Source: Setoptus koraiensis
Lineage: Eukaryota > Animalia > Arthropoda
NCBI GenBank assembly: GCA_048013815.1
Contig: CM106586.1
Location: 22,692,001-22,756,000 of the forward strand
Direction of reading: 5' to 3'
DNA: 64,000 nucleotides
Made by a program: the position numbers and the translations under genes. The notes under the pieces were generated by a model that saw nothing but the letters and a program-made list of their open reading frames with translations, had not been told where the DNA came from and searched no databases. Of the stretch, positions 782 to 30,752 are shown one piece after another (positions within the stretch are counted from its first letter, which is position 1; each line of letters begins with the position of its first letter).

Positions 782-3457
782 ATGCGCCGTGTTGCGCAAC
801 AAATCGCCCAAATTGATCAATCAACCGATTTGTGCCGAACCGCAACTAAATCGCGCGCCTTAAATGGCCAAAATCGCCAATGGAAACGAACGACGACAAC
901 GACAACAATCACAATGAATGATGCAACCACCACCAACAACAAACAACAGCAAAACGAGACCGCCATGGACATTGCGCTACGCAAAGATCTAATTGAGATA
1001 CAGGAATTGATTGCAAATCCGCCCCCTAGGGGCCAGAGTCAGAAACACAGCCATAGCCGTTTAAATCGTTCCAACAGCAAGCTTGCCAGCAGTACAAATG
1101 TCGCACAAGATGCCAACAACAGCGACGACCAACAACAACCACCAGAGCACCGGCACAATGATTTTGATCAGTCGGACAATGACAATGACGACAATGACAA
1201 CGACAATGATGCACACAATCATCATCGTCATCATAGACGAAAACGGCATCATCATCATCACGGCAACAATCATCATAGGCAGCATCATCATCGTCATCAT
1301 CATCCAACAACAACAACAACAACAGCGGCACCGACTGCTGACCACCAAACAAATGTGTACATTTCTAGCAAATCTATTCGTCATCAGAGGCGCCACTTGC
1401 AACGACTAAAAATTGCTCAACAACAGCAACAGACGGAAACTGGCACACTGGAGCCAGCGCCATCTACCAGTGATAATGTGATCAACCGACAGCATCAAAG
1501 CGATGCTGTTACGCAAGGCACAAATTATGGTTATGCTACCACCGCCAATACCACAACAAACACAATAATAGGCCAACAACAACAACAACAGCAGCAACGA
1601 TTGAGGCGGCCCCATGCCAATCATCATTACAATCATCATCAGGGCTCCTCTAGCGGAAGTTGCAGTAGCTCTAAATCGGCCAGGTTACGTTTGAGCAGGT
1701 TGCGGCTACAATCGTCGTCGTCGGCGGCACTGCGACACAACAACAGTAACAGCAACAAACAACAACGTTCGTTACTGTTACACAATAGGCCCAACAGTGC
1801 AACATTGCAACTGGCTGGCGCTTGTGGCACCGGAACCGGAAGTGTCACGGGGCCGCTTGCTGGCACTTCCGGCAAGATGGTGTCAGCGCAATTGGGTGGC
1901 ACAACTGGTGCCGCGAGATTGCAAAGTTATAGTTCGAGTCAGTTGGTGCTAAACCAACAACAGCAACAGCAACTACAACTACTGCAGCACCACGTGAAAC
2001 AGCACTCCATCAGTCAATCGCGCATAGGTGGCGGCAGCAGCAGCAGATTGGCCAAGGGTGGCAATCAATTAATTAACTATTCCGTGAACAATGTCAATTG
2101 TGCAGTGTTGCACATAGACGACAACGACTACACTGCCGTCGTGGCCAAACAACGGACCACCACCGCCGCCCTCAACAACAACAGCAACAACAGCAACAAC
2201 ACCAGCAACAACAACAGCAACAACAATGGCGAAACTGCCACCACCACCACAACTAGCACTAACAACATGATTGATTTAATAGATATTGATTTATTGGACG
2301 GCAGACAGCAGCAGCAGCAGCAGGCGACAAAGATAGCAAACGGCGACAACAGCGTCAAACAACAACACGATTTGCTGTTGTGCCAGCAGTCGCAAGGGGC
2401 CCAGTTTGAGGCTTGTGCGCCGGATGCGCGCGATCATCCCTCTAAATGGCGCCTCATTATGGAGAGCAGTGCGGCCATTGGTCACTCGCTGGCGCGTTTT
2501 GACGCAAGCGCAACAACAACCACAACGGGCCCCAAGAGCTCGCCCTTGGTGCCGCTGTCATCGATGACAGATGACAGCGGTTGTGTCAAGAGCACCAGTC
2601 AGCTGTCGCCGAAATATGCCAACACTGGCAGCTCTAGATTGTTGCTGTCCAGTCACACTGTCCAGTCTTGTCTAGAGGGCGCTCATGTGACGACGGGCAA
2701 CAATGACATCGCGCAACAGCAACCACAACAACAACGCCAACGACAACCGCAACAACAACATCAACGACAACCACAGGATAACAAGGCACAGCGAAAGCAA
2801 CAAAACAGCGCCAACAGGTGCGGCCCGGAACCAACTAAAAAGACACTGAGGCGCCACTCGCCACTGTCGCAATTGTCCGGCGTGCATCGTTTGACCCCGT
2901 TGCGTCCCCTGCTGGCCAATTATTCAACTAGCAACACAACGGCCTTTAATTCGTTGAAGCGCCAACAGGGCGCCGGTCAGTCTAGCAAGAAGCGGCGAGC
3001 GGGCCGTCAATCACTGTTTGCTGTTATGAAATTGCCAGTCACTCTTGGCTTGATGGCCTCTGGTGGCCAGAAAACGAACAACAAAAAGCAACAACAACAA
3101 CAACAGGACAACAACAGTGACGACGACGACCAATTTGAGGATATCGATATCGTCGAAGAGGACGACAATTGTCACAACAACGCAACTGAAACAAACAACA
3201 ACAACAAGACCACAATTGCACAGTTGCTGAGCCAACCGGAAACAGCTGGTGACAACAACGACATGTCAAAAGCGGTTGGCAGCCAGCAAATGGGTGGTCG
3301 CAGGGCCGAGCGACAACTGAGGCAATCAGACAGCAGCAATCAATATCAGGTGATAGGAGCCAATGGGCGCCCGTTGCGTCAGACGCGCCCCCTGGCGCCG
3401 CTGAGCGAGGCTCATCAATTGTATGCGGTGCCTAACAAGTGTCACGCAATCAAAAGG
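782..3457 (+). CDS. Large low-complexity (Q/N/H/T/S-rich) coding exon of an unidentified protein; probably spliced at its 3' end
   Basis: 909-codon ORF 782-3511 with sense-strand CAA/AAC repeats. Strong donor AGG|GTAAGT at 3458 (phase 0) just before the stop. No recognisable domain. True start (782 or a later ATG) and the downstream exon are unresolved. Confidence 0.55.
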
Positions 3458-5622
3458 GTAAGTTTTGGCCTTAGTGGCTCACGATCGACCATTGTCGGGC
3501 TCGATAGATAGAGGTCACTGGCGTTGGTCCTGCATCTGTTATATATTGCATGCGACTGGGTTACGTAAGAGACATTTTTGTGTTGTATTTTTGTATTTTT
3601 GTATGAGCAACAACAACATACAACTTGTGTAATACAAGCGCTGCAAGAGTGTGACATATATGAGATATCGACTGGCGAGCTTGTGAGGGCTTGTGAGGGC
3701 GGACTGACCTTGCGAGCTGCTCACAAACTTTGTCAGGCCGCAAACAAAGAGCGTTTAGTGCGGAGTTTGTCGACCCGCAGCGCGATTTACATGCGGCGCG
3801 CCATGGCAATCGGCTCTGGCCAGTTGATTGATTCGTCACTCGACATCCGATACCCGATGCCCGGCGGCCAATCGATGGCCGGCGTCCAGTGGCCAGTGCG
3901 CCGAGTTGCGCCACCAAATTAGATTAATGGCGATCCGATGCGATCGGCGCCACGCTCGACTCGAGCGGCTCGAGGATGCGAGCGGCGCAATTGTTGTCGT
4001 TGCTGTTGCTGTCGTTGTTGTCGTTGTTGCTGTTGTTGTTGCTGTTGTCGTTGTTGCTGTTGCTGTCCTTTGGAGCGCTTAAACGCTACGTCCGAGTGAC
4101 GCCGGCAACGGCAGCGTCAGCACAACAACAGCAACGACAACAACATTGTCGCAACAAGCGCATTGTGTGACGCAATGCTGCTGCAGTCGGCGTGTAATGG
4201 CTTGCCGACACGCTACAGGGCATCGAGTGCAGATGCGACACATTGCGCAACGTACACAGGTAATGGCAGCGTAATGCACAGCGAGATAGGGCAAGAAACA
4301 AATTATTACAAAAGAGTTTAGTGGCCATTTCACACTTTGATGAGCACATGATCTCTCTCTCTCTCTCTCTCTCTCTGTGCCGATCTGTCGCTGACACAAA
4401 CGAGGCGACGCACGACAACTAGCTTGCCATTTGCGCCAAGCACCGTGCCAAGCCGGCGGCCATTGTATTGGCGTTGGCGTGTTGTGGCCGGCGAGTCAAT
4501 CGAGGCCAATTGAGACACTTGTCGTTGGGGCACACAAACGCACAGACAGCTGACCATTCAATTGGCGTGCCGATTGAATGGTCAGCCGACTGCCATTTCG
4601 TGCTTCCATGTGGACATGGCAAAATGCACACCAGAATGGACACCAAAATGGACACCAGGCGACCTTTGACAAACTGTCTGTCCGTTTGCGCCACTCTAAT
4701 ACAGTCACTCTATCGGCCGTCTGTCTACCTGTCAAGCCTGTGTGCAGTGTGTGTCGGATTACGCAACTGCATCTCGCTGCAACTGCCAACCGCGCACAGC
4801 TGACCACTGGTCACCAGTGACTGGTGGCCACTCCCGGCAACTCTGTCCAAATTCAATGTCCAAATTCAATGAACTGTCTCTCGTTGAAATTCAATGATCA
4901 CGCTCGTCAATGATGCTTGCGCGACTCGCCGCCAGAGTGACACGAGACTCTTGTTACAAGAGCGCGGTGGCACTCGAACATGAACAAGCAGACATGACAA
5001 TGATCGCCACAATGAACGGCCAACTAATAGCCAGCCAATATCTGCCAGGGGACGGTCAATCAATTAGCCATTCGTTGGCCAGTGCGTCGGGCCATTAGTC
5101 AGGTTAATGTTGCGCCAGAGTCAGGCCAGTGTTACGTCAGAGTTGGGCCAGTGGATGGCGAGCCCAACGACAACAAGTCAATTGTTTGCATTGTTGCCCG
5201 CTCTGGCGTGTTGCTGGCTGGCGGGCGCTGGCCGGCCAGTGCAACAAGTTGCCGCCGAGTGGCCAAATTGAGCCATCAAATCGATCATTGTTTTGCTGCT
5301 CAATCGCACGCTGGCCAAGTGAGTCCGCTCACCAGACAAGTGTGTTGTGGCCGCGGCGCGCTCACCTGTCGCAAATGCACATTGTGTCGTATGTGGCCGG
5401 CATTGCGCAATCAATCGGCCCGGCCCGGCCCGACATTTGGCAATCAATCAGACCGGCCCGCGTGGCGTGGTGTCGCACTGCAAGCAACTGTTTTTGTTGC
5501 AAGTTACGCAATCAACGTGCCACAGCAAGCAACTGCGCTCTGCAGAGAAAGTAGCCGCGGCGACATTGGATTGCTGCCACTTCCGGTCAGCGGGCCGGCG
5601 CAAGCGGCTTCAGTGGCCGGTT

Positions 5623-7268: not shown

Positions 7269-10200
7269 ATGACGCAATATGACGATGTGATGAAATGGCG
7301 TCTGCAGAGACAGCAACAGGACGAGGCGGCGGCTGCCGCGGCCCTCGTGGCGCCCTCTACTGGCCACGCCGCCAACGACGACTCGTCGGGATCATCGTCG
7401 GCCGCGCTCACTAGCGCCTCTAACCCGGACCTGTCCAACGAATCCGCACAGCAAGCGCAACAATTAACCGTTAGACCTATGACCATGGACGAGCAGCAGC
7501 AGCAGCAATCTGACCAAAATCTGGCCAAACACTGCGCTGACCAACAACCACAACAACAACCAGCGACATCGGCCGCCGTGATAGGAGTGAGGCGACACAC
7601 GCAACTGACCGGATGCTCGTCTCAGTCGACAATGGCCGACAAGGAGCTGGACACAACTTTCGACACGCAACAACAGCAGCTCGCTAAGCAGTGTTGCACG
7701 GACTGTCACAAGGAAATGGGGCCGGCGACGAGCGGGCCCAGCGGCGCCGACGGCGCACTAGACGCAAGCGCAATGTTGGCGGATAATTGCTGTGCGCCGG
7801 CGGGAGGGGCGCCGGTCAACAGCCGGCAGCAGCAGCAGCAGCAATTGTGCATTTGCAGTCCGTACGGGCGCAATTCGGGCCAGCCCGACTTGAACGAGTT
7901 TCCGCGGCCCAAGTTCGACATGAGCGCCTCTAGCGCCCCCCTGAAGGAGGGCGAAAAGTACTACATGGATCTGGGTAAGTTCACGACGCTGCCACGGTGG
8001 CGCTCGTCGTCGCGATGTGACGCCGCGCAATCGGTTATGTAATCGGTCAAACGCAAACACTGTCAAAATCATCACTAATTACTTAATTAATTTAAATCTC
8101 GCGCTTATTTGTTACCCGACAGCCGGCAACGTGCGCAAGGGCCCAGTGGGCGTGCGACAAGTGGCCCCCGTCGAGTGTGTGTGCGCCTCGGATTCGCAGC
8201 CGGCACCAACGGCAACGACATTGCAGCAGCAGCAGGACCCGTCGGGGGTCGGGCAACAGCGGCTGTTCGGCGACCCGGACGACGACGCGGACGAGGGCGC
8301 CGCGCGACAAAAACCGCAACCGGACAACGAGGACCAATTGAGCGCCGACGCAAGCAACGACCTCAAGACGCTGCTGGCCATAGAGAGGGGCAAACAGTCG
8401 AGCACGGCAGCGGCCACGGGCGACCGAGGCGCCCAACAGCCGCTCAACAACGTAAATCACGGTTCGAATGGGGCCCACTCGGCCACAAATACCCAGTACT
8501 CGACCGGAAGCCGACAGTCGCGCCAGCGACAGCAACTCATTGAGGCCCCGTATCAGTATGGATCGCTGAGTTATTATGCCTTTTCGCCCGTTGTGCAGGC
8601 CTCGTCGGATTTGATCGACAGACCGGAACAGGTTGCCGGCCCGTCGGATTCGGCGCCGGCGCCGCCGCTACCCGCAAAGCATCAGCAGGCGAGCAACGAC
8701 AGCGAGCCCGCCACGGGCAAGCCGCCGGGGCAACAACGCGACAACGACAAGCCAGCGGCGGGCGGCCCGCCCAGGAACGACAAGAAGAGCAAGGAGGCGC
8801 CCCCAACCAAGAAGTCGTGGCTCATGTCCAAGCTGACGCTGTCCTCGAAGAACCAGCTCAAGCTCGCCGGCAAGGCGCTAGCGGCAAGCCAAAAGAACGG
8901 GCCGCAATCGGGCGAGCCGGACAAGGGGGCCGCGAGCAGCGACAAAGCCGCCGGTAAATCGAGCGGCGCGGCGCCCGACGACAAACTGGCCGCAAGCGCC
9001 GACAATCTGCACGGTCCCGAGCGCAGGCCCGAGATAATTCGTTTGGGCGGCGCCCCTGAGGCTGAGCCGGTGCCCGTGAACGGCAGCGCGGGCCAATTGG
9101 CGTCGGGCCGCCATTTGTATTCGGCGGCCAGCCAGTCCGTGGTGGCGCAACAGAAGAGCCTGGCCGCGGCGGCCGCCGCCAAGGTGCACCAGCTGAAACT
9201 GCACAACGGCCGGCCCGGCCTGCAGTCGCGCGCCAGCCTGGAAATGGCGAGCGCGGGTGCGGCGGCCGCAACGGACGGCACCCCGTTGCCCGGCGACACG
9301 AAAACAGCCAAGTCAGAGCAATCGGTCCAGCAGCAGCAGCAACAGGTGAACAGGGCCGCGTACGCGCTCAACATTCAGGTGTTAGACCCGTTGGGGGGCG
9401 TGGGCCTCCATGCCAAGACGGACGGAAGTAAGTCGGCCAACAGCGTCGGGATGTCCGATTCGTCGCCGTCGAACAATGGCGCCGACTCGGACAATTCCAT
9501 TCACAGCGGCTCTAACCAGTCGAACGGGACCACAACAAACACAAGCCAGGCCACCAGCACGAGCAACCCGAGCCCGTTGGGCGTGCTCAACCGGCTACTA
9601 TTGAACACGCACACGAGCGTTGTTGCGGTGACCGCAGGATGCGGCCCGAAGAAGAGCGGTTTGCCCGTGGTGTCGCGGCCCGTCGGCAAACCGGCGGCCG
9701 ACCTAGCGGTGGCGGCACAACAACAACAACAGCAGCAGCAACAGCAGACAACCACAAACATGGGATCGGACGGCCAGAGCGAGGCGCCCTCGTCGTCGTC
9801 TGTGTCGCCCTCGTCGTCGTCGCAAACGACAACAACCACGGGTGGCACCACGACGCATCCGTCGGGCGACCTGACCAGCGCGGGCGCGTCGCCCGCGTCG
9901 CTGTCGCCGCTGGCGCAACCGACAACAACGCACGGTAACAAAGCGGCGGCGGCGGCCCGTGCGCCGCTGTTGACCTCGGCGAGCGCCATTCAGGACCTGC
10001 AGCGCGTGGACAGAATCGTGTCGGACCACATTATGAAGCGAACGACTTCGGCGCACGCGACGGGCTTGCATCAGCCGCGACCGGAAGCGGAGGCCGGCGC
10101 CAAGTCGCTGACGCTGTCCGACGTGGACTGCGCGGGCAGCGCGCAACTGGGCAACTGCACCCGCTCCAGGCGGCCCATATTCGTCAATGGGGGCCACAGT

Positions 10201-11568
10201 ATGACCGGAAGCGGCCCGACCGACATGGACATCGTAGTGGGCGACGCAACGAACCGCGCCGCCCACCCGTCGTACGAGCCAACCCGCACCGGCAAACCCG
10301 ACCAGCAGCAGCAGCTCACAGTGGAGCCGCCCCCGCCGCGTAGATGCGTGTCGTCCGCAAACGAGCGACACACACTGACCGCTTCGGGCCAGCAGCAGCA
10401 GGCGCAATACAACCCGTACATGACCAACGTAATGATGATGGCGCCCCAGTACCCCGCTTCGGGCGCTGGCGCCGCTGTTGTGCCCCTGTGCGAATATCAT
10501 GCCAACAGCCGGGCCGCAATTCAAAATTCCACTTCCGGCCCGCTAGCCAACAATTATTTTGTGCGTGCCGACGATGCAGCGCACCACGTGCACACCATGT
10601 CGGCCGCCAGCAGTCACCACCATCAGCAGCAAATGGACGCGGCCGCGGCCAGCTACGAGTATTACCTGTCGACAACGGCGCCCCAGCGGCCGGTGTACCT
10701 GAGTCACGGGTACGACAACGCGTACCAGTCGCTGCTAGAGCAGCAACAGGGCGCCGCCAACCAGAGCCACCTGTCGGAGAGTCTGTTGTGTTTGCCGGCG
10801 GCGGCGACAGGTAGCAGCAGTTTGCTTCAGCAGCAGGACAAGCACCTATCTCAGCACTTGTCGGCTCAGCAACGTCGCCAATTGCCCCCCCGGCCCAAGA
10901 GTTCCCTAGATGGCGCCATGCTTCATCAGTATCAATCGACGCCACACTACCTGGTCGACAGTAACGGGTACAGCGCGGGTGGCGCCGCCGCGCCGCCGCT
11001 GCACACAGCCAACGGGTACGCAAGCGCAGCCGCGCCCGCCTCTCTCGTGAGCTTGTATCAGCAGGCCGGCGGATATCCGCTGGCGCCCATGTATCACTCG
11101 AGCTTTTATTTGTATGACGGCGCACAGCAGGACATTTCGGCCGGTTCGGGCGGCGGACTGACCGTCATGTCGGCCAGCGGAGCGCCGTCGGGCTATCGGA
11201 GCGTTTCCGTTGCGCCCCCGTATCAGCAGCAGCAGCAGCCGGCCACCGGCAACGGCAAGCAATCGTCGTTGAGTGTGGTGTCGCCGGGCACCCTGTCAAG
11301 TCAGTACTACCAACAAAAGCAGCATCAGCATCGCGTCTACGTGAGCGCCGCCGGCCCGCCAACAACGGAACCGCCAACAAGTGCCAACCAGGAGCCCCAA
11401 AACGGCGCCTCAGAGGGGCCAAATCATAAGTCAATATTGTCTAGTCATAATGGTCACACTGGCAGCAAGGTGACCGTATCAACCGGGCCGGCAGCGGCCA
11501 ACAAGCAGGCGGCCGACACAGCGCAACTTGTGGTCAAGCACAAGCTGACAACTCTGGCGGCCATCTAA
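7269..11568 (+). CDS. Two-exon (7269-7974, 8123-11568) ~1383-aa disordered Q/A/S/G/P-rich protein of unknown function
   Basis: Donor CTGG|GTAAGT at 7975 and acceptor CCGACAG| at 8121-8122 are both phase 1 and join ORF 7269 to ORF 8017 in frame (EKYYMDL-A-GNVRKG). GC-rich codons and a long uninterrupted ORF. May be the 3' part of the gene starting at 782. Confidence 0.7.
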
Positions 11569-23501: not shown

Positions 23502-26500
23502 TCAGTCGGGCACTGGCTGGCGCTGGTTGGGGCCAGTCAGCGGGTCTGTCAGCGGGTTTCTCCTGTTGTCTGAAGATGCGGGGGCGGCGGCGGCGGCGGG
23601 TGATTTGACAACAGTGAGAGATGATAGTTTTGAGGAGCAATTGTTAGGGGGCGCTGGTGACGAGGAGGAAGAAGAAGAGGACGACGACGACGACGAAGAC
23701 GAGGAACGGGTCGACGACGATGAGCCACGGGACGACGACGACGACGATGAAGATGACGACGACGACGACGATGACGACGACAATGGCGACAACATTGCCG
23801 CCTGGCTGAGAGTTGGCTCAACGGAAGTGGCGCTGGCGCTTGTGTTGGCGGCCGAATATTTGAGGCGCTTCTGTTTCTGGCGCTGATTGCAAAACCAAAC
23901 TCTAACGGTGTTCTTTTTCATGTCCAGTCGCTGGGCAATGGCCGATATCTTTTCGCCTGTTGGCCTAGAATTAATGGCAAAGTATGCCTCTAATGAGCGT
24001 TTCTCTGACGACGCTATAGAGGTGCGCTTGCGCCGGTCCGAATCGGGCAGCACGTCCTCGCCCTGGCTGGCCGTCTGTTGACCGGCACCACCAGCAGCTG
24101 CTGTATTGTATTGCTGCTGACTTCCGGTCAAGTCTTGAGAGCGCTTGTTGGCCGCTGGCGCAACGTACTGCTGCTGCCCGTCTGGCGTTTGCAATTTGGC
24201 GCGCTTGCCATTGTCACAAATGAGATAGCCGTCTAGTGAGACAGACTGATTGTCCGACGATTGTCTGGACGCTTGCGCGCCCTTGAGCCTGGCCTGATGA
24301 TTGTAATTGCTGGAATTGTTGTCTGAAATTGCATTGTTGGCCTTATTGTTGTTGTTGTTGCTGTTGTTGACGTTGGCGCGGTTAGAATTGCTGACCGCTG
24401 ACGAGGAGCCCTGATGATGGCTGTCGGTGGCGTGATTGAGCAGCCGATCCGCGTAGGCCGACTGCAACAGACTGTTGTTGCCGTTGTTGCCGGTGTTGTG
24501 CAAAAATGACAGCTGACCACAACTGTCGCTGTTTGTATCACTCATTTGTGTGGTCGATGTGGCCGAAGTTGGCCTCGTGTCGATCATGCTGCTGCTGTCC
24601 ACAAATTGCATGTGGCCTGATGCGGGCACGACCAACTGGTCAACTCTGTTATCATTGGGCCTGTCGTTGTTGGTGGCGCCGGCACAATACGAGCTAGTGT
24701 CGTTGGTGTCGTGGCTCGTTTTGGTTGCCGACTCACCTAGGTCGCCGTGCACATCGGGCGCCACGTCAGCTTTGTCTTTGTTGCTGTTGACTTGACAAAC
24801 TGCGGCGGCTTGTATCGACTTCCGGTCTACTGAGTTAACCAGCAACAAGTTGTCTGCTGTGCTCGTTTGCTGTCTGCTGTTTGTGTGACGCTCAGTCGCT
24901 GTTTGTGTTGCGTCACCATGTGTCGTGCCACCGGTCAGTTGTGCAGTGGACAGTGTTGCAGTGTTGGCAAATGGGTCACTATCAGTGTCGCCGGTTTTGC
25001 TAATATTATCAGTATTTAGCAGCAGCACCGACGTGTGATCGGAGCCACCGATATCGAGCAGGCTTCTGGTGACAATATTGTCAGTTTGTAGCGTCTCTGT
25101 TGTGGCGTCATTGCTTTGATTTGCGTTTGTGTCTGTGGCGCGAGTTGTTTGGTCGAGCTGGCTTGTCGTGTTGCTCGGTGATGCCGCTTGTTGCGTCACT
25201 TGGTGGTGGTCAGCGTAACTGGTCAGTTGTTTGTATTGGTCGTGCTGTTTTTGGTGCATGACAGCGTCGCTCACAATGAGCGTGTAGTATCCAGTGTTCG
25301 TTGTTGTTGTTGTTGTTGTCAGTTGTTGCTGACCTTGCTGATCTAGGTACTGTCTTGTTATTGGATTGTCGGCTGGCGCTTGTGCGTATGTTGCCGCCGG
25401 TCGCTGTTGATCGGCGCCGCCGCCGAAATTGACCCCGTTGTCCCGTAGCAAACAATTGACAGTGGCCACTTGCTTGCCATTCGATATTTGGTTTGTCATT
25501 ATTGAACTTCCGGTTGCTGCTGTCATAATGGGCTGTCCTGTGTCGGTTTGTGCATAGCTTACGCTGCCCCCAACAGCTGACTGCTGCTGCTGCTGACAAA
25601 ACGCGTGCTGCTGCTCGTGCTGCTTGACATGCTGTGATTTATGGCCCGCCGTTGAGTGCCTGTCAGTGACGCTGTTGCGATCACTGGCCGCCAGCGGTCG
25701 CGCTGTCACACCCATGTGACAGTCGTGTGTCAGCTGATTGCTGACATGCTCGTCAGCTGATCGCTGACTGTTGTTGTTGTTGTTGTTGCTATTAGTGTTG
25801 TTATTGTTGCTATTAATGTTGTTGTTGTTGGCTGCTGCCGACTGGTTGTTGCTGTTGAGAGGGGCGCCCGTGGCGCTGAACGCGGAGCTGGTTCGCGCCT
25901 TGCGCGCCTGGTACTCGGCCGCCTCGAGCCAGGCCTGCAGAATGGGCCTGAGCGCAATCATGTTGTTGTGCGACAAGGTGAGCGATTCGAATCTGACAGT
26001 TGCGGCATTGGGGCCCATGTTTGGGTTAGTGAGAGATTATTCAGAGGTTAATTCAGAGATTGTGTTGAAGTGAGAGAGTCGTGCAACGGTTAGCGCCGGT
26101 TACGTAACATGTACGGCGACTGTCATGATCGCCGACGAGTGACGGGATAGGCAGCGACGCCCACGCATACTCACCTGCATATGGTACTCTGCGACAGCGA
26201 GCCCACGCCGGGCAGCTTCAGGTTGGCCAGCGCCTTGCCCACGTCCGCTTGCGTCACGCCCAGCTTGATGCGGCGCTGCTTGAAGCGCTCGGCAAACTCC
26301 TCCAATTCGCTGGGCTTCACGTTGTTGTTTGCGATGTGTTGCTGGACTTGGCCGGCGGGTCCCGTGGCGCCGGGCTTCACGTTGTTGCTGCCGGCGCTGA
26401 CGGGCGTCGATTGGCACGATATCGGCGCGTTGGGCACGTGAGCCGTCGAGTAGTTAGTGGGGCCGGGCTTGCTCAGCGGGACACTCGCAACGCTGGCCTG

Positions 26501-29194
26501 ACAGCCGGCTGACGGGCACTTCGGATTGGCCCGCCGGCCCGTTGGGCCGCATTTTGCCGACGAGTGGGCGCCGCCCGACGAGTGGCCCGGCTTACCGGCG
26601 GGCGTCGCCGTTGCCTGGCCGCCGCCGCCGCTCGCTCCCGCGGCCGCTCGGCCGCCCACAGCCGGCAGCGGAGCAGCAGACCCGGCCACCATGACATTTG
26701 GCACAAAGCTGGCCGCTGGCGCGGCACTCATCTGGTGCCATTGCTGCCGGTTGGCGGCCGCCGTTATGGCAGCGGCCTGCTTGCTGGCGGCCTCGCTCAT
26801 GGCGCACACAACGGGCGTCAGCGGGCCGTGCGGGTCGGGCGGCCCGCCGCCACCGCCCACCGCAAACTGACCGCTGGACGCCGGTGGACGGCCCGCGGCT
26901 GCCTGGTAGCCGGCCGCCTGGTAGTACTGGCCCACGATGCCCACCGACGGGCTCGCAAACAGCGGTCGCTGGCCAACCGACGACGCCAGCTGATTGAGCG
27001 TGCTTGCGTCGAGCTTGCCGCACTGGGCTCGCTGCGGGCCGGGCTCGGCCGTTGCGCCGCTCGGGGGCGCTGCCGGCCCGACAGCGCACAGGTGAGCGGC
27101 CTTGGCGGGCTCGTCCTGTTTGGTGGGCGCATCCGTTGCTGTTTGCAAATGGGCTCCAATTGAGTGCTCGTTTGACTGTTTGCTGCTGTTGTGCTGCGCC
27201 GCCGGCCGGCCTATATAACGGCCCGCGTACAGTGTGTGCGAACCGGAAGTGCCGGCCAGGCCGCCCGACGCGTGGAAAGCGTGATGCTGCTGCGGGCCGC
27301 CGCCGCATTGCTGATTGTTTGTTGTGGCGCTCGTTGTCTGTTGCATAATCGCGCCCTGATTGCAGCCAGCGCCGGATGTTACGTAATGCTCTATTATGCC
27401 ATTGTCCATTTGGTGCTGCTGCTGACGAGCCGCATAGTAATTGCTGGCCATGTCCAGCTGATTACTGTGCTGACCAATGGGATGGTTCAGGTACAGCTGA
27501 TGGTGGTTGAGATACGCGACGCTTGGTGTCGCCATGGCCGCCTTGATTGGGCTGGGCCCGTTATAGTGCTGCTGCTGCTGTTGATGGTGGTGGTGGTGGT
27601 GCTGTTGTTGGTGGTGCTGATGCTGCTGCTGGAACAGCGCGTCGTCCATAGCTGTGTGCTCCTGCGGGCCGGTCGAGCCCGCCAGCGACGGGTAACCGGT
27701 CAGTTGAGTGGCTGTTGTAGCGGCCGCAAAAGTGTTGTACTGGGCCGTTGCGGCAACTTGTTGGTGCTGCATCATTGTTGCGGCACTATTCACATACCGG
27801 CCGCCGGCCTGGTGGCCGCTCAACGGGCCAACGTTACCCGTGGGCGCGGGGTGCGCCGATGCTGGGCCCATTAGGTGAATGGGGTGTGTGTGGCTGAAGT
27901 GGCGCTGCGGTTGGCTTGGGGCCGCCTGCCCGCCCCCGTTCAAGTCGCCGGGTGCCGGGTCGACAAAGCTGCCCATGGAAGCGGCCGCAATCGGGTTGGT
28001 GGGGGCTGCCGCATTGGACAACGACACCGCCGAAACGGAGGAGCTCGACGACGATGACGAGCACGAGTTGGGGGTGCCGCTCAGCGCTGCACTATCCACG
28101 TGTGAATAGTGGTTAGTGGTAGTGGTTTGGTTGTGCAGTGGCGCCGCCGTGGTGCAGTGTTGCTTTGTCACTGCGCTGTAGTTGTGATACTGTTGTTGTT
28201 GTTGTTGCTGTTGTTGCTGTTGTTGCTGTTGTTGCTGCTGCTCGTTGTTGGCGTAGCTCTGCTGACAGTTGACGGGCGCTGTGTCCGAGTTACGCAACAG
28301 CGAGCTGGCGCCCTCTGTGACTGCGTGCTGGCTCGTCGATGACATGAATGGCAGCTGTTGTTCCAAGTTGCAATTGTTGTTGCTGTTGTTGTTGTTGGCG
28401 TATTGCTGTTGCTGGTAGTGTTGTTGATACTGTTGTTGTTGTTGTTGTTGATGTTGGTGGTGTTGATCGTGGTCGGCGCTGAACAAATTGGCCAGCATCC
28501 CCTGATCGTGGCTACCGTTTCTGGCGCTTGTCAGCGGATCGAGCGTTATTTTGTTGTTGATGCTGTTGTCGTTGATGCTGTTGTTGTCGTCATTGTTGTT
28601 GTTGTTGTTGCCATTATTGCCACTTGTCATAGTTGTCGCCGACGATGATGAACTGGCCCCCGTTGTGCTGCTGGCGTTGTCAACGGCGGCCCCATTGTAG
28701 GCCCGATGTTGCTGTTGCTGCTGTTGATCCAGGTTGTGGGTGTTGTTGTGGTTGCTGTTGTTGTTGTTGTTGCTATGTAACGATGTCGCCGATTGGCGAT
28801 GATAGGTCGCTAGGTGCTGCTCCGATGGCGACGCCGTTGAAGATGTCGCGCTCGAGGGTGTTGTTGCCGTTGGCCTGCCGGTGCCCACTGACGGTGGATA
28901 AAGCGACGGGTACGAGGCATTATAGTGCGAGTTGGCGACATTATCCGAGCTACCGTTGTCCGATAAATTGCTATTGCCACTGGTGCCCATTGTGTGAGCG
29001 CCCAAAATAGTGTCGCCGGCCAAAATCATGGAGGCCAGCGAGTCGCAATTGGTTGCGATTGTCGGAAATGTGAAACCGGCCGCCACCAAACTGGTTTGCT
29101 GTTGCTGTTGCATACTGTCAATCATATCCAATCCGGTCAGAGTAGAGCAGCCGTACGAGGGCGCATTGCAGTCGGTGAATTGGTGCGCGGCCAT
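23502..29194 (-). CDS. acj6: Class IV POU-homeodomain transcription factor (Acj6/Brn-3/Unc-86 family), ~1836 aa; exons 29194-26175 and 25992-23502
   Basis: POU-specific domain [71 protein letters not shown], split by a phase-2 intron 26174-25993 (GTGAGT...TGTCAG). Homeodomain RRKRTSIASSEKRSLEAYF...VRVWFCNQRQKQKR is POU4-type. First in-frame ATG is 29194; an upstream exon is possible. Confidence 0.93.
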
Positions 29195-30752
29195 CGCTGC
29201 CAATTGGCGCTTGACCAGCTCAACTGGCTCAATCAATTAATTGGCTTGATTAACGAGTGACAGCGCTTGTATTTAGTGATTTATGACGGCAGTCTGAGAG
29301 CGCGAGGTTGATACAGGGGGAGAGACAGGGTTGAGAAGGGAGCAAAGAGTGTGAATTTATTGACTGATTGAGCACCACTGTGACAGCTTAAACTGAGACG
29401 AAAATCGATCGACAGATATAGATTTGAGCGGCCCAAATTGAACAAAAATTGCCAACAAAAATTTCATTTTCGCCATTGGTCAAAATCGAATCGGCCGTGT
29501 CATTCATTGGATAGATCCATCAGATCATGAGCTGTGTCCAAGAGCAAATTCGCGCCAATAAAGTCGCCTATGAATTGAGAGTGATTACGCGACAATTATT
29601 AAACCGCAGCACCAACTGAGGCCCACAGACCGATGGGCCGGGCGACAGCGGGTCAGTGCGGAGGCTCATTTGTGGCGCACACCGTTTGCGGCACCCGACC
29701 GTTCGGGTTTGAGCACCCTCGGCACGGGTTTAATGGGCGCGAAACGAGCCCAAGTTTAAGTGGGCCCATACCACTACATGTGGCATAACTGTACAATATA
29801 CATGTAACTGCATAATATACGTGTAATATTGTGGCATAAATTAACTTGTTTATATTGTTTGTCCGTATCAGCGTGCGTTATGCAACGTCCGGCCCGCGTT
29901 ACGCAACGTCCGGCCTGCGTTGTGCAACGTCCGGGCCCCGCATGTGAACGGTGGGCGTGCTCACAATCATAATAATGATAATAGTTGGCGGTATCATTAT
30001 GATTGCTATTATCATAATGATCGTTAAATGTTAACATATTGGCCACTGGCCGGCGTAACAAGGTAACCGGGTCGGCGGCTCGTGGCACGAGCTCACTTGC
30101 CGACTCGGTTTCGCTGGCAATCGCTGGCACGTTGGCCGCAGCGATTGTGCACGTACCCAGTGATGGCAAACAGCGCTCGTCGAGATTGAAACTAATTTCA
30201 GTCCCAACGAGCGCCGCTAATTGATTCATGGGATTTGATTGCGACGCTACCTAGTGGCTGCGTTGCGACAGCGGCGGTGGCATCGCAACGCTAGTTAGAT
30301 TAGATTGGGCCACTGACCGACGGCGCCATCGCCAACAGCGACAACAACGACAACAACAGCAGCAACGACAACAACAGCAGCAACAACAGCAACAACAGTA
30401 ACAACGACAACGGCAACAACGAGCCCGCTGATGAGCGCCCAATTGAGCTAATTTGTATTTTTAAATTACAAATCAACGTGATGTGACTACTACTGTTTGC
30501 ACGCGCTCGCGCGTTATTGCACTCGAGCTGCACTTGAGTTGGTGCACGTGCTCACCGTGCGGCCGGCACGTAGGCATTAGCGTTGGTGCAGTGACAGCAA
30601 TCACAACAGTGCATTGACAATGCTTGTTACTTATATTGTTTGTTTGCTAGCTTGTTGGTTGCCAGTTGCTTTGTTTGGCCGAAATTGCATTTGAATGCTA
30701 ATTAGTGTGTCACAATGTAATCACTTTTGCCGTGCTGGCACGAGCCACAACA

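What the first reader, a model, noticed from the sequence alone, without database searches (positions are those of the whole stretch)
24036..25913. POU-IV factor with a ~626-aa linker between the POU-specific domain and the homeodomain
Established: POU linkers are about 15-56 aa, and POU4 linkers are among the short ones; the tether sets cooperative bipartite DNA binding. Seen: LEAAE and RRKRTS are separated by 1878 nt of uninterrupted, in-frame N/Q/T/S-rich sequence. The only consensus donor I noticed inside is CTAG|GTGAGT at 24736, and using it would still leave roughly 390 aa. The homeodomain is also mildly diverged (ASSEK, AINSRPTGEK). Inference: the two DNA-binding subdomains are effectively uncoupled, which could allow binding of distant half-sites, looping or condensate behaviour.
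Basis: partly seen in the sequence, partly recalled or inferred. Interest (0 to 1): 0.72.

Follow-up and report, generated by a model that had tools for sequence, protein, structure and literature searches.

The report
Mite POU4 gene with giant linker
A mite's version of the nerve-cell regulator POU4 (Brn3/Unc-86/Acj6) carries about 600 extra floppy residues between its two DNA-binding halves. The extra stretch looks translated rather than spliced out, and related mites and a rotifer have similar but shorter or independent expansions, so the short tether thought typical of this protein family is not obligatory.

Summary
On the minus strand, LEAAE (end of the POU-specific domain, 25914) and RRKRTS (start of the homeodomain, 24035) are separated by 1878 nt, or 626 codons, with no stop. 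The other two frames have 20 and 31 stops, and none of 5000 dinucleotide shuffles was stop-free.

The stretch resembles an exon. Its GC is 0.54 against 0.35-0.39 in the flanks, and its synonymous codon use matches exon 1 (r=0.84). It is unique in the genome and only about 8% is triplet repeat.

No in-frame GT..AG pair with a reasonable donor restores a linker of 60 aa or less. The one strong donor (24736) would still leave at least 413 aa.

Tetranychus, Oppiella and dust-mite POU4 have a 24-aa linker with the same two ends. The mite therefore has an insertion of about 600 aa inside the ancestral linker.

Its closest relatives are 13 unnamed sequences, the six contigs I fetched being genomic and apparently intron-free. 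They have open linkers of 119-257 aa. Seison nebaliae independently has 609 aa.

I read it as a translated, disordered giant tether. A chain model suggests it weakens the coupling of the two halves about 15-20 fold rather than abolishing it.

This is a new variant of a known kind, of moderate interest.

The parts
26175..29236 (-). Exon carrying a low-complexity N-terminal region of about 970 aa (Q/N/H/S/A-rich) and the first half of the POU-specific domain, ending ...SQSTIC(R). The first in-frame ATG is at 29194. The Pou match covers about 26175-26314.
   Evidence: ORF; Pfam PF00157 at 53.1 bits, residues 975-1021; genome match at C2:22718174-22718314; first Met at index 14.
25993..26174 (-). 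A 182-nt intron inside the POU-specific domain (STICR|FESL), with donor CAG|GTGAGT and acceptor ...CTGTCAG|A.
   Evidence: Read from the minus strand; donor matches 9 of 9 consensus positions. The dust-mite ORF P0046 starts at the same point. The median eriophyoid intron is 170 bp (PMC7738191).
25914..25992 (-). Second half of the POU-specific domain: FESLTLSHNNMIALRPILQAWLEAAE.
   Evidence: Pfam PF00157 at 32.5 bits, residues 8-35 of ORF 23502-26018; coordinates checked.
24036..25913 (-). Open linker of 626 codons, YQARKAR...[about 600 aa]...GEDVLPDSD. Its first 6-7 and last 8-9 residues match the two ends of the 24-aa linker of other acariform POU4 proteins.
   Evidence: 0 stops against 20 and 31 in the other frames, and 0 of 5000 shuffles open; GC 0.536 with GC3 above GC2; codon use correlates with exon 1 at r=0.84; unique in the genome; linker ends compared with P0002, P0046 and P0048.
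24731..24740 (-). Donor-like site CTAG|GTGAGT (GT at 24736-24735), the only strong donor match in the linker.
   Evidence: 8 of 9 consensus matches. There are 11 in-frame downstream AG sites, removing at most 639 nt, which leaves at least 413 aa.
25769..25847 (-). Largest (CAA/AAC)n-type triplet tract, encoding poly-N. Smaller tracts lie at 25295-25331, 24473-24498 and 24341-24392. Together they make up about 8% of the linker.
   Evidence: Tandem Repeats Finder and the repeat finder.
23865..24035 (-). POU homeodomain with an intact basic N-terminal arm (RRKRTS) and recognition helix (VRVWFCNQRQKQKR).
   Evidence: Pfam PF00046 at 61.1 bits, residues 662-718; 77% identical to vertebrate POU4 over 64 aa.
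23502..23864 (-). C-terminal tail with long poly-serine runs, plus the stop codon at 23502-23504.
   Evidence: ORF translation; GAC/GTC triplet arrays at 23659-23794.

Best explanation
This is the single POU class IV (Brn3/Unc-86/Acj6) gene of a small, intron-poor acariform mite genome. Earlier notes of this scan call it a gall mite. An in-frame insertion of about 600 residues has grown inside the ancestral 24-residue linker and is translated as part of exon 2. The protein therefore has its POU-specific domain and homeodomain joined by a 626-residue polar tether that is probably disordered.

Shown here: the open frame, the exon-like composition and codon use, the retained ancestral linker ends, the lack of any credible intron that restores a short linker, and the presence of long open linkers in the nearest relatives.

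Inferred: the insert arose through the same tolerance of in-frame low-complexity growth seen elsewhere in this gene and genome, namely the 970-aa N-terminus, the poly-S tail and the nubbin-like linkers of 59-108 aa. Both subdomains keep their DNA-contact residues, so the protein most likely still binds bipartite POU4 sites. The tether lowers the effective local concentration of one subdomain near the other by roughly 15-20 fold (about 4 mM to about 0.2-0.3 mM in a Gaussian-chain estimate). It also allows half-sites to lie much further apart, with an rms reach of about 120-140 A. The extra sequence may additionally serve as an interaction or activation region, but that is speculation.
For: Frame. 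There are 0 stops in 626 codons against 20 and 31 in the other frames, a shuffle mean of 14.8 and 0 of 5000 shuffles open.

Composition. GC is 0.50-0.56 in the linker against 0.33-0.39 in the flanking non-coding DNA, and the same strand skew runs through exon 1. GC3 is 0.61 and GC2 0.47, the same direction as exon 1. Synonymous codon choice correlates with exon 1 at r=0.84.

Origin. There is no second copy in the genome, no Pfam domain in the linker, and only about 8% is triplet repeat.

Splicing. Only 6 in-frame GT..AG pairs leave 60 aa or less. All have donors matching 3-4 of 9 consensus positions, against 9 of 9 for the real intron. The strong donor at 24736 leaves at least 413 aa.

Ancestral ends. 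Tetranychus urticae XP_015795497.1, the Oppiella nova protein and a dust-mite cluster have LEAAEAQARK.R...VLPS.DKKRKRTSI with 24 aa between the domains. The window has LEAAEYQARKAR[...]VLPDSDRRKRTSI.

Relatives. Thirteen unnamed proteins have linkers of 119-257 aa. The six contigs I fetched (for P0013, P0028, P0039, P0008, P0038, P0017) are genomic and their genes read as unbroken ORFs. Their best match in this genome is this gene. An ML tree on 86 columns gives the split {window + 13 long-linker} against 42 other POU4 proteins, with support 97/96. In one pair of the family the linker has pN 0.41 against pS 0.81 and all indels keep the frame.

Independent case. Seison nebaliae KAI3382302.1 has a 609-aa linker inside one continuous 1661-codon ORF at 35% GC.

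Context. Eriophyoid genomes have 75-84% intronless genes and a median intron of 170 bp (PMC7738191; bioRxiv 10.64898/2026.08.24.746826).
Against: The window's linker shows no detectable similarity to the family's linkers: an HMM of the family scores it no better than shuffles. A shared origin of the long linker therefore rests only on an 86-column tree and four shared residues.

No close relative of this genome was found, so dN/dS on this linker itself cannot be computed.

The acceptor of the gene's real intron is not pyrimidine-rich either, so weak-looking sites cannot be excluded by motif alone.

Codon use of the linker against three other genes of the window is not frame-specific: r is 0.52 in frame and 0.57 in frame 2.

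The AF2 single-sequence model is too poor to prove disorder; even the homeodomain scores about 50 pLDDT.
Confidence: 0.7

Rival explanations
1. The whole linker, or nearly all of it, is an in-frame intron removed from the mature mRNA through weak or non-canonical splice sites. The protein would then have a normal linker of roughly 10-50 aa, and the open frame would be a by-product of T-poor composition.
For: The minus strand has only 14.5% T, which lowers stop frequency. Six in-frame GT..AG pairs would leave 10-52 aa. The gene does contain one real intron nearby. The ancestral linker ends flank the insert exactly, as would be expected if an intron had been gained inside the linker.
Against: Even with this composition, shuffles give 14.8 stops and none of 5000 is open, and the other two frames have 20 and 31 stops. 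The candidate donors (GTACCA, GTCGGC, GTTCAG) match 3-4 of 9 positions. GC is 0.54 against 0.35-0.39 in non-coding flanks. A 1.7-1.85 kb intron would be about ten times the median intron of the only eriophyoid with published statistics, in a lineage that loses rather than gains introns. The nearest relatives carry long linkers, and the fetched contigs show them in what read as intronless genes.
Confidence: 0.1
2. Part of the linker is an alternatively spliced 'exitron' that uses the strong donor at 24736. This would give isoforms with linkers of about 413-595 aa beside the full 626-aa form.
For: TAG|GTGAGT matches 8 of 9 consensus positions and is the only such site. GTGAGT is expected only about 0.16 times by chance in this sequence (my estimate from the base composition). 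Eleven in-frame AG sites lie 93-639 nt downstream, including TCTCACTAG| with 71% pyrimidines.
Against: A single hexamer match is not significant (chance of roughly 15%). The stretch downstream of it stays open and has the same composition. No RNA data are available.
Confidence: 0.12
3. The gene is decaying or is an assembly artefact. On this view the insert is foreign or mis-assembled sequence, or the gene is a pseudogene that no longer makes a working POU4 factor.
For: The homeodomain is slightly diverged (ASSEK, AINSRPTGEK). No POU-IV box was found in exon 1 or in the 12.7 kb upstream.
Against: About 1850 codons stay open across two exons, with intact splice sites and intact DNA-contact residues. 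It is the only POU4-type locus in the genome. The insert has the same skew and codon use as exon 1 and no other copy exists. The POU-IV box motif was also not found by the same regex in the Tetranychus and Oppiella proteins.
Confidence: 0.04

Closest known systems
POU class IV factors (Brn-3a/b/c = POU4F1-3, C. elegans UNC-86, Drosophila Acj6/I-POU), with the mite orthologues Tetranychus urticae XP_015795497.1, the Oppiella nova POU domain protein and Euroglyphus maynei OTF74204.1
   Same: The POU-specific domain and homeodomain are 70-77% identical. The linker ends are the same (LEAAE.QARK.R ... VLP.SD.(K/R)RKRTSI). The intron position inside the POU-specific domain matches the dust-mite ORF. 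The basic arm and recognition helix are intact.
   Different: The linker is 626 aa instead of 17-26 aa. The N-terminus is about 970 aa instead of about 300-400 aa. The tail is poly-serine. No POU-IV box was detected.
An unnamed long-linker POU4 family from Logan/ENA/JGI contigs (P0008, P0013, P0016, P0017, P0019, P0021, P0028, P0038, P0039, P0093, P0098, P0099, P0110)
   Same: It is the nearest branch in the tree (97/96). It shares derived residues: ALRPIL, LDM, NTVRVWF and KRLKYS. Its linkers are long, open and fast-evolving. In the fetched contigs the neighbouring OGG1 and LIM genes are 66% and 84% identical to this genome's copies over their best segments.
   Different: Linkers are 119-257 aa, with a conserved aromatic-acidic patch and a KKRKK cluster before the homeodomain that the window lacks. 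There is no intron in the POU-specific domain. The homeodomain is more diverged (RERRLLEAHF). Their organisms are not identified.
Seison nebaliae hypothetical protein SNEBB_011396 (KAI3382302.1)
   Same: It is a POU4-type protein with a 609-aa N/S/T-rich linker that is one continuous ORF in the genome.
   Different: It comes from a rotifer, so the origin is independent. It groups with the canonical POU4 sequences in the tree. Its genome is AT-rich (35% GC). It exists only as an automatic gene model.
Oct-1/Oct-4 linker work (the tethering model of POU binding)
   Same: The architecture is the same: two helix-turn-helix subdomains joined by a flexible tether that raises local concentration and sets the allowed half-site arrangements (PMC4482079).
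   Different: The linkers studied are tens of residues long. Nothing near 600 aa has been tested, and my literature searches found no description of such a linker.

Membership tests
POU domain transcription factors, class IV | POU-specific domain (Pfam PF00157) present and complete | tested here: met
   The domain is split by one intron. Profile positions 3-46 score 53.1 bits and positions 45-72 score 32.5 bits; both exceed the 27-bit cut-off.
POU domain transcription factors, class IV | POU-type homeodomain C-terminal to it, with a basic arm and WFCNQRQKQKR | tested here: met
   PF00046 scores 61.1 bits over profile positions 1-57 of 57. RRKRTS and VRVWFCNQRQKQKR are seen in the alignment.
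POU domain transcription factors, class IV | Closest to class IV rather than classes II, III or VI | tested here: met
   The best named hits are POU4 or I-POU proteins of mites, molluscs, flatworms and vertebrates. The genome's other POU loci are of the vvl-like and nubbin-like types.
POU domain transcription factors, class IV | Short flexible linker (about 15-56 aa in the family; 17-26 aa in most POU4 proteins) | tested here: not met
   The linker is 626 aa. Among 102 POU4-type proteins measured, 76 have 30 aa or less and only one other exceeds 300 aa.
POU domain transcription factors, class IV | N-terminal POU-IV box (..RAEAL..) | tested here: inconclusive
   The motif is not found in exon 1 or in the 12.7 kb upstream. 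The same regex also fails on the Tetranychus, Oppiella and Seison proteins.
POU domain transcription factors, class IV | Bipartite DNA binding to POU4 sites and expression in sensory neurons | not testable with these tools
   This needs EMSA or SELEX and in situ or RNA data.

The most novel reading that the evidence does not exclude
POU4 is unusually tolerant of tethers hundreds of residues long, or even benefits from them. A long linker arose at least twice: once in the mite lineage holding this genome and its 13 relatives, and once in the rotifer Seison. It has been kept open through divergence deep enough to saturate synonymous sites. If so, in these animals the POU-specific domain and homeodomain act as semi-independent readers that can bridge half-sites tens of base pairs apart, and the linker has become a regulatory or interaction region in its own right.
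Probability: 0.25. Interest if true: 0.7.

Novelty: new variant of a known kind. Interest (0 to 1): 0.5.

Why it matters
The POU domain is the textbook case of two DNA-binding modules whose cooperation is set by a short tether. Natural proteins with 120-630-residue tethers, in a gene otherwise under very strong constraint (POU-specific domain 100% and homeodomain 97% identical between deeply diverged relatives), offer a ready-made series for testing how tether length controls affinity, half-site spacing and site choice. They also show that gene annotation pipelines should not force an intron into such regions. Within this mite the linker is one more example of genome-wide in-frame growth of low-complexity loops, which is odd in a lineage otherwise famous for genome streamlining.

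Tried and rejected
I did not resend, trim or try another route to reads. Later work used protein-level and own-genome tools by reference only.

(2) Linker similarity. A profile of the relatives' linkers scored the window's linker no better than 200 shuffles.

(3) dN/dS in the family. The close pairs are identical in the linker (P0013/P0042 and P0008/P0045). All other pairs are only 35-39% identical with saturated synonymous sites. Only pN below pS could be shown.

(4) Structure. The AF2 single-sequence model of exon 2 has mean pLDDT 34 and even the homeodomain is poorly modelled, so it says nothing about hidden folds.

(5) Protein atlas. The best score of 0.77 is at noise level.

(6) Closer relatives. 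The exhaustive HMMER search found no protein matching the linker itself. All top scores come from the two domains.

(7) Organism names.

(8) Codon use against other window genes was not frame-specific.

(9) Poly(A) signals. There is no AATAAA or ATTAAA inside the linker or in the 400 nt after the stop.

The exons were searched separately by reference, and the tree used exon-2 columns only.

Full report
What is there. The gene is on the minus strand. The ORF 26171-29236 encodes about 970 residues of Q/N/H/S/A-rich sequence and then the first half of a POU-specific domain, ending ...LSQSTICR (Pfam PF00157 at 53.1 bits). A canonical donor, CAG|GTGAGT, sits at 26174 and an acceptor...CTGTCAG|A, at 25993. 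Together they define a 182-nt intron. Exon 2 begins with FESLTLSHNNMIALRPILQAWLEAAE, the second half of the Pou domain (32.5 bits). It continues without a stop through 626 codons and then encodes a complete homeodomain, RRKRTSIASSEKRSLEAYFAINSRPTGEKISAIAQRLDMKKNTVRVWFCNQRQKQKR (PF00046 at 61.1 bits). It ends in a poly-serine tail with the stop at 23502.

Is the open frame more than chance? The coding strand is T-poor (14.5% T), which lowers stop frequency. Even so, the other two frames hold 20 and 31 stops. Dinucleotide-preserving shuffles give 14.8 stops on average, and none of 5000 was open. GC is 0.50-0.56 across the linker, like the rest of the gene, whereas DNA on either side of the gene is 0.33-0.39. 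GC3 (0.61) exceeds GC2 (0.47), the same direction as in exon 1. Synonymous codon choice correlates with exon 1 at r=0.84. Only four or five short (CAA/AAC)n tracts are repetitive, about 8% of the length. There are no large internal duplications, no other copy in the 48.8-Mb assembly and no Pfam domain in the linker.

Could it be an intron? I enumerated all in-frame GT..AG pairs. Only six would leave 60 aa or less, and their donors (GTACCA, GTCGGC, GTTCAG) match 3-4 of 9 consensus positions, against 9 of 9 for the gene's real intron. The one good donor, TAG|GTGAGT at 24736, lies 392 codons into the linker. With the farthest in-frame AG it removes 639 nt and still leaves 413 aa. Published eriophyoid genomes have 75-84% intronless genes, a median intron of 170 bp and massive intron loss with almost no gain (PMC7738191; bioRxiv 10.64898/2026.08.24.746826). 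That this genome is a gall mite comes from earlier notes of this scan, and I did not verify the species. What I saw is consistent with it: two contigs of about 24 Mb each, many very long uninterrupted ORFs in the window, and best named POU4 matches from acariform mites.

Where the insert sits. Tetranychus urticae XP_015795497.1, the Oppiella nova protein and a dust-mite cluster that includes Euroglyphus maynei OTF74204.1 all have a 24-residue linker, LEAAEAQARK.R........VLPS.DKKRKRTSI. The window has LEAAEYQARKAR, then about 600 residues, then GEDVLPDSDRRKRTSI. Both ends of the ancestral linker are kept in frame, so the novelty is an internal expansion and not a rearrangement.

Relatives. The word search and the exhaustive HMMER search found no protein that matches the linker itself. 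They did reveal 13 unnamed proteins with linkers of 119-257 aa. The six contigs I fetched (for P0013, P0028, P0039, P0008, P0038 and P0017) are genomic. On the longer ones the neighbouring genes, including an RNA polymerase II large subunit of more than 1448 aa and a Med24 of 1156 aa, are single ORFs. I did not fetch contigs for the other seven. The best counterpart of the family in this genome is this gene. The neighbouring OGG1 and LIM genes are 66% and 84% identical to this genome's copies over their best segments. An ML tree on the 86 columns encoded by exon 2 gives the split {window gene + the 13} against 42 other POU4 proteins, with support 97/96. Four shared derived residues agree with it: ALRPIL, LDM, NTVRVWF and KRLKYS. 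The tree is short and is rooted only by assumption, namely that the root lies among the other bilaterian POU4 proteins. Within the family the linker evolves fast (35-39% identity) but stays open. In the pair P0013/P0039 it has pN 0.41 against pS 0.81, while the POU-specific domain is 100% and the homeodomain 97% identical. The family's linkers share an aromatic-acidic patch and a KKRKK cluster. The window's linker does not match their profile, so I cannot say whether 626 aa grew from a shared linker of about 200 aa or arose separately.

Independent cases and context. Seison nebaliae KAI3382302.1 has a 609-aa linker inside a continuous 1661-codon ORF at 35% GC. The POU4 of the monogenean Protopolystoma xenopodis has about 130 aa. 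In this genome the vvl-like POU3 gene has a normal linker, roughly 20 aa by eye, but the three nubbin-like genes have 59, 59 and 108 aa, the last with an extra N-rich block. Earlier notes of the scan report similar in-frame low-complexity inserts in other conserved proteins of this genome. I tested that only through the POU paralogues.

How it probably works. The DNA-contact elements of both subdomains are intact, including the basic arm whose loss makes Drosophila I-POU unable to bind DNA (PMC4482079). In the tether model the linker raises the local concentration of one subdomain once the other is bound. A Gaussian-chain estimate (persistence length 3-4 A, subdomains 30 A apart) gives about 4 mM for 24 aa and about 0.2-0.3 mM for 626 aa, with an rms span of 120-140 A. 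From memory, Klemm and Pabo (1996) measured about 3.6 mM for Oct-1; I could not check that paper here. The subdomains are therefore still coupled, but 15-20 fold more weakly, and they could reach half-sites several helical turns apart. 'Uncoupled', looping and condensates remain conjecture. N+Q is 22%, and the mean hydropathy of 0.395 lies just on the disordered side of the Uversky line at 0.422. The AF2 model is too poor to use.

Limits. 

Verdict. This is a new variant of a known kind and of moderate interest.

Noticed in passing
L029:5001-9986 (Seison nebaliae, GCA_023231475.1 JALJEE010002126.1): A rotifer POU4-type gene (KAI3382302.1, 1645 aa) has a 609-aa N/S/T-rich linker inside one continuous 1661-codon ORF at 35% GC. 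This is an independent giant POU linker.
   Followed up: partly
G000:C2:18811000-18817000, 18870500-18877000 and 18897000-18903500 (L026-L028): A cluster of three nubbin-like POU2 genes. The two at 18.87 and 18.90 Mb are near-identical, which suggests a recent tandem duplicate. Linkers are 59, 59 and 108 aa, the last with an extra N-rich block.
   Followed up: partly
L011, L012/L013 and L030 (Logan and ENA contigs): The long-linker POU4 relatives keep the gene order Pou-OGG1-(x)-LIM-ANAPC15 in compact contigs whose genes read as intronless ORFs. In this genome OGG1 and LIM lie on the other contig, so that synteny is not shared.
   Followed up: partly
L011 and L034 (both from run SRR29837393): Two different long-linker POU4 proteins (P0013, 922 aa, and P0038, 664 aa) come from the same sequencing run. 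Either the sample holds mixed species or one genome has two paralogues.
   Followed up: no
window 782-3511 (+) and 8017-11568 (+): Two very long ORFs (909 and 1183 aa) have no Pfam match at E<=0.001.
   Followed up: no
window 23527-23886 (+): A 119-aa acidic (D/E-rich) ORF lies antisense to the poly-serine tail of the POU4 gene. It is most likely a mirror image of the GAC/GTC triplet arrays rather than a gene.
   Followed up: no
G000:C1:5175762-5175971 and 5182357-5182566: Two divergent Pou-domain hits (45.8 bits each) lie about 6.6 kb apart on opposite strands. They may be the HD-POU-K50 homeodomain gene noted by an earlier finding of the scan.
   Followed up: no
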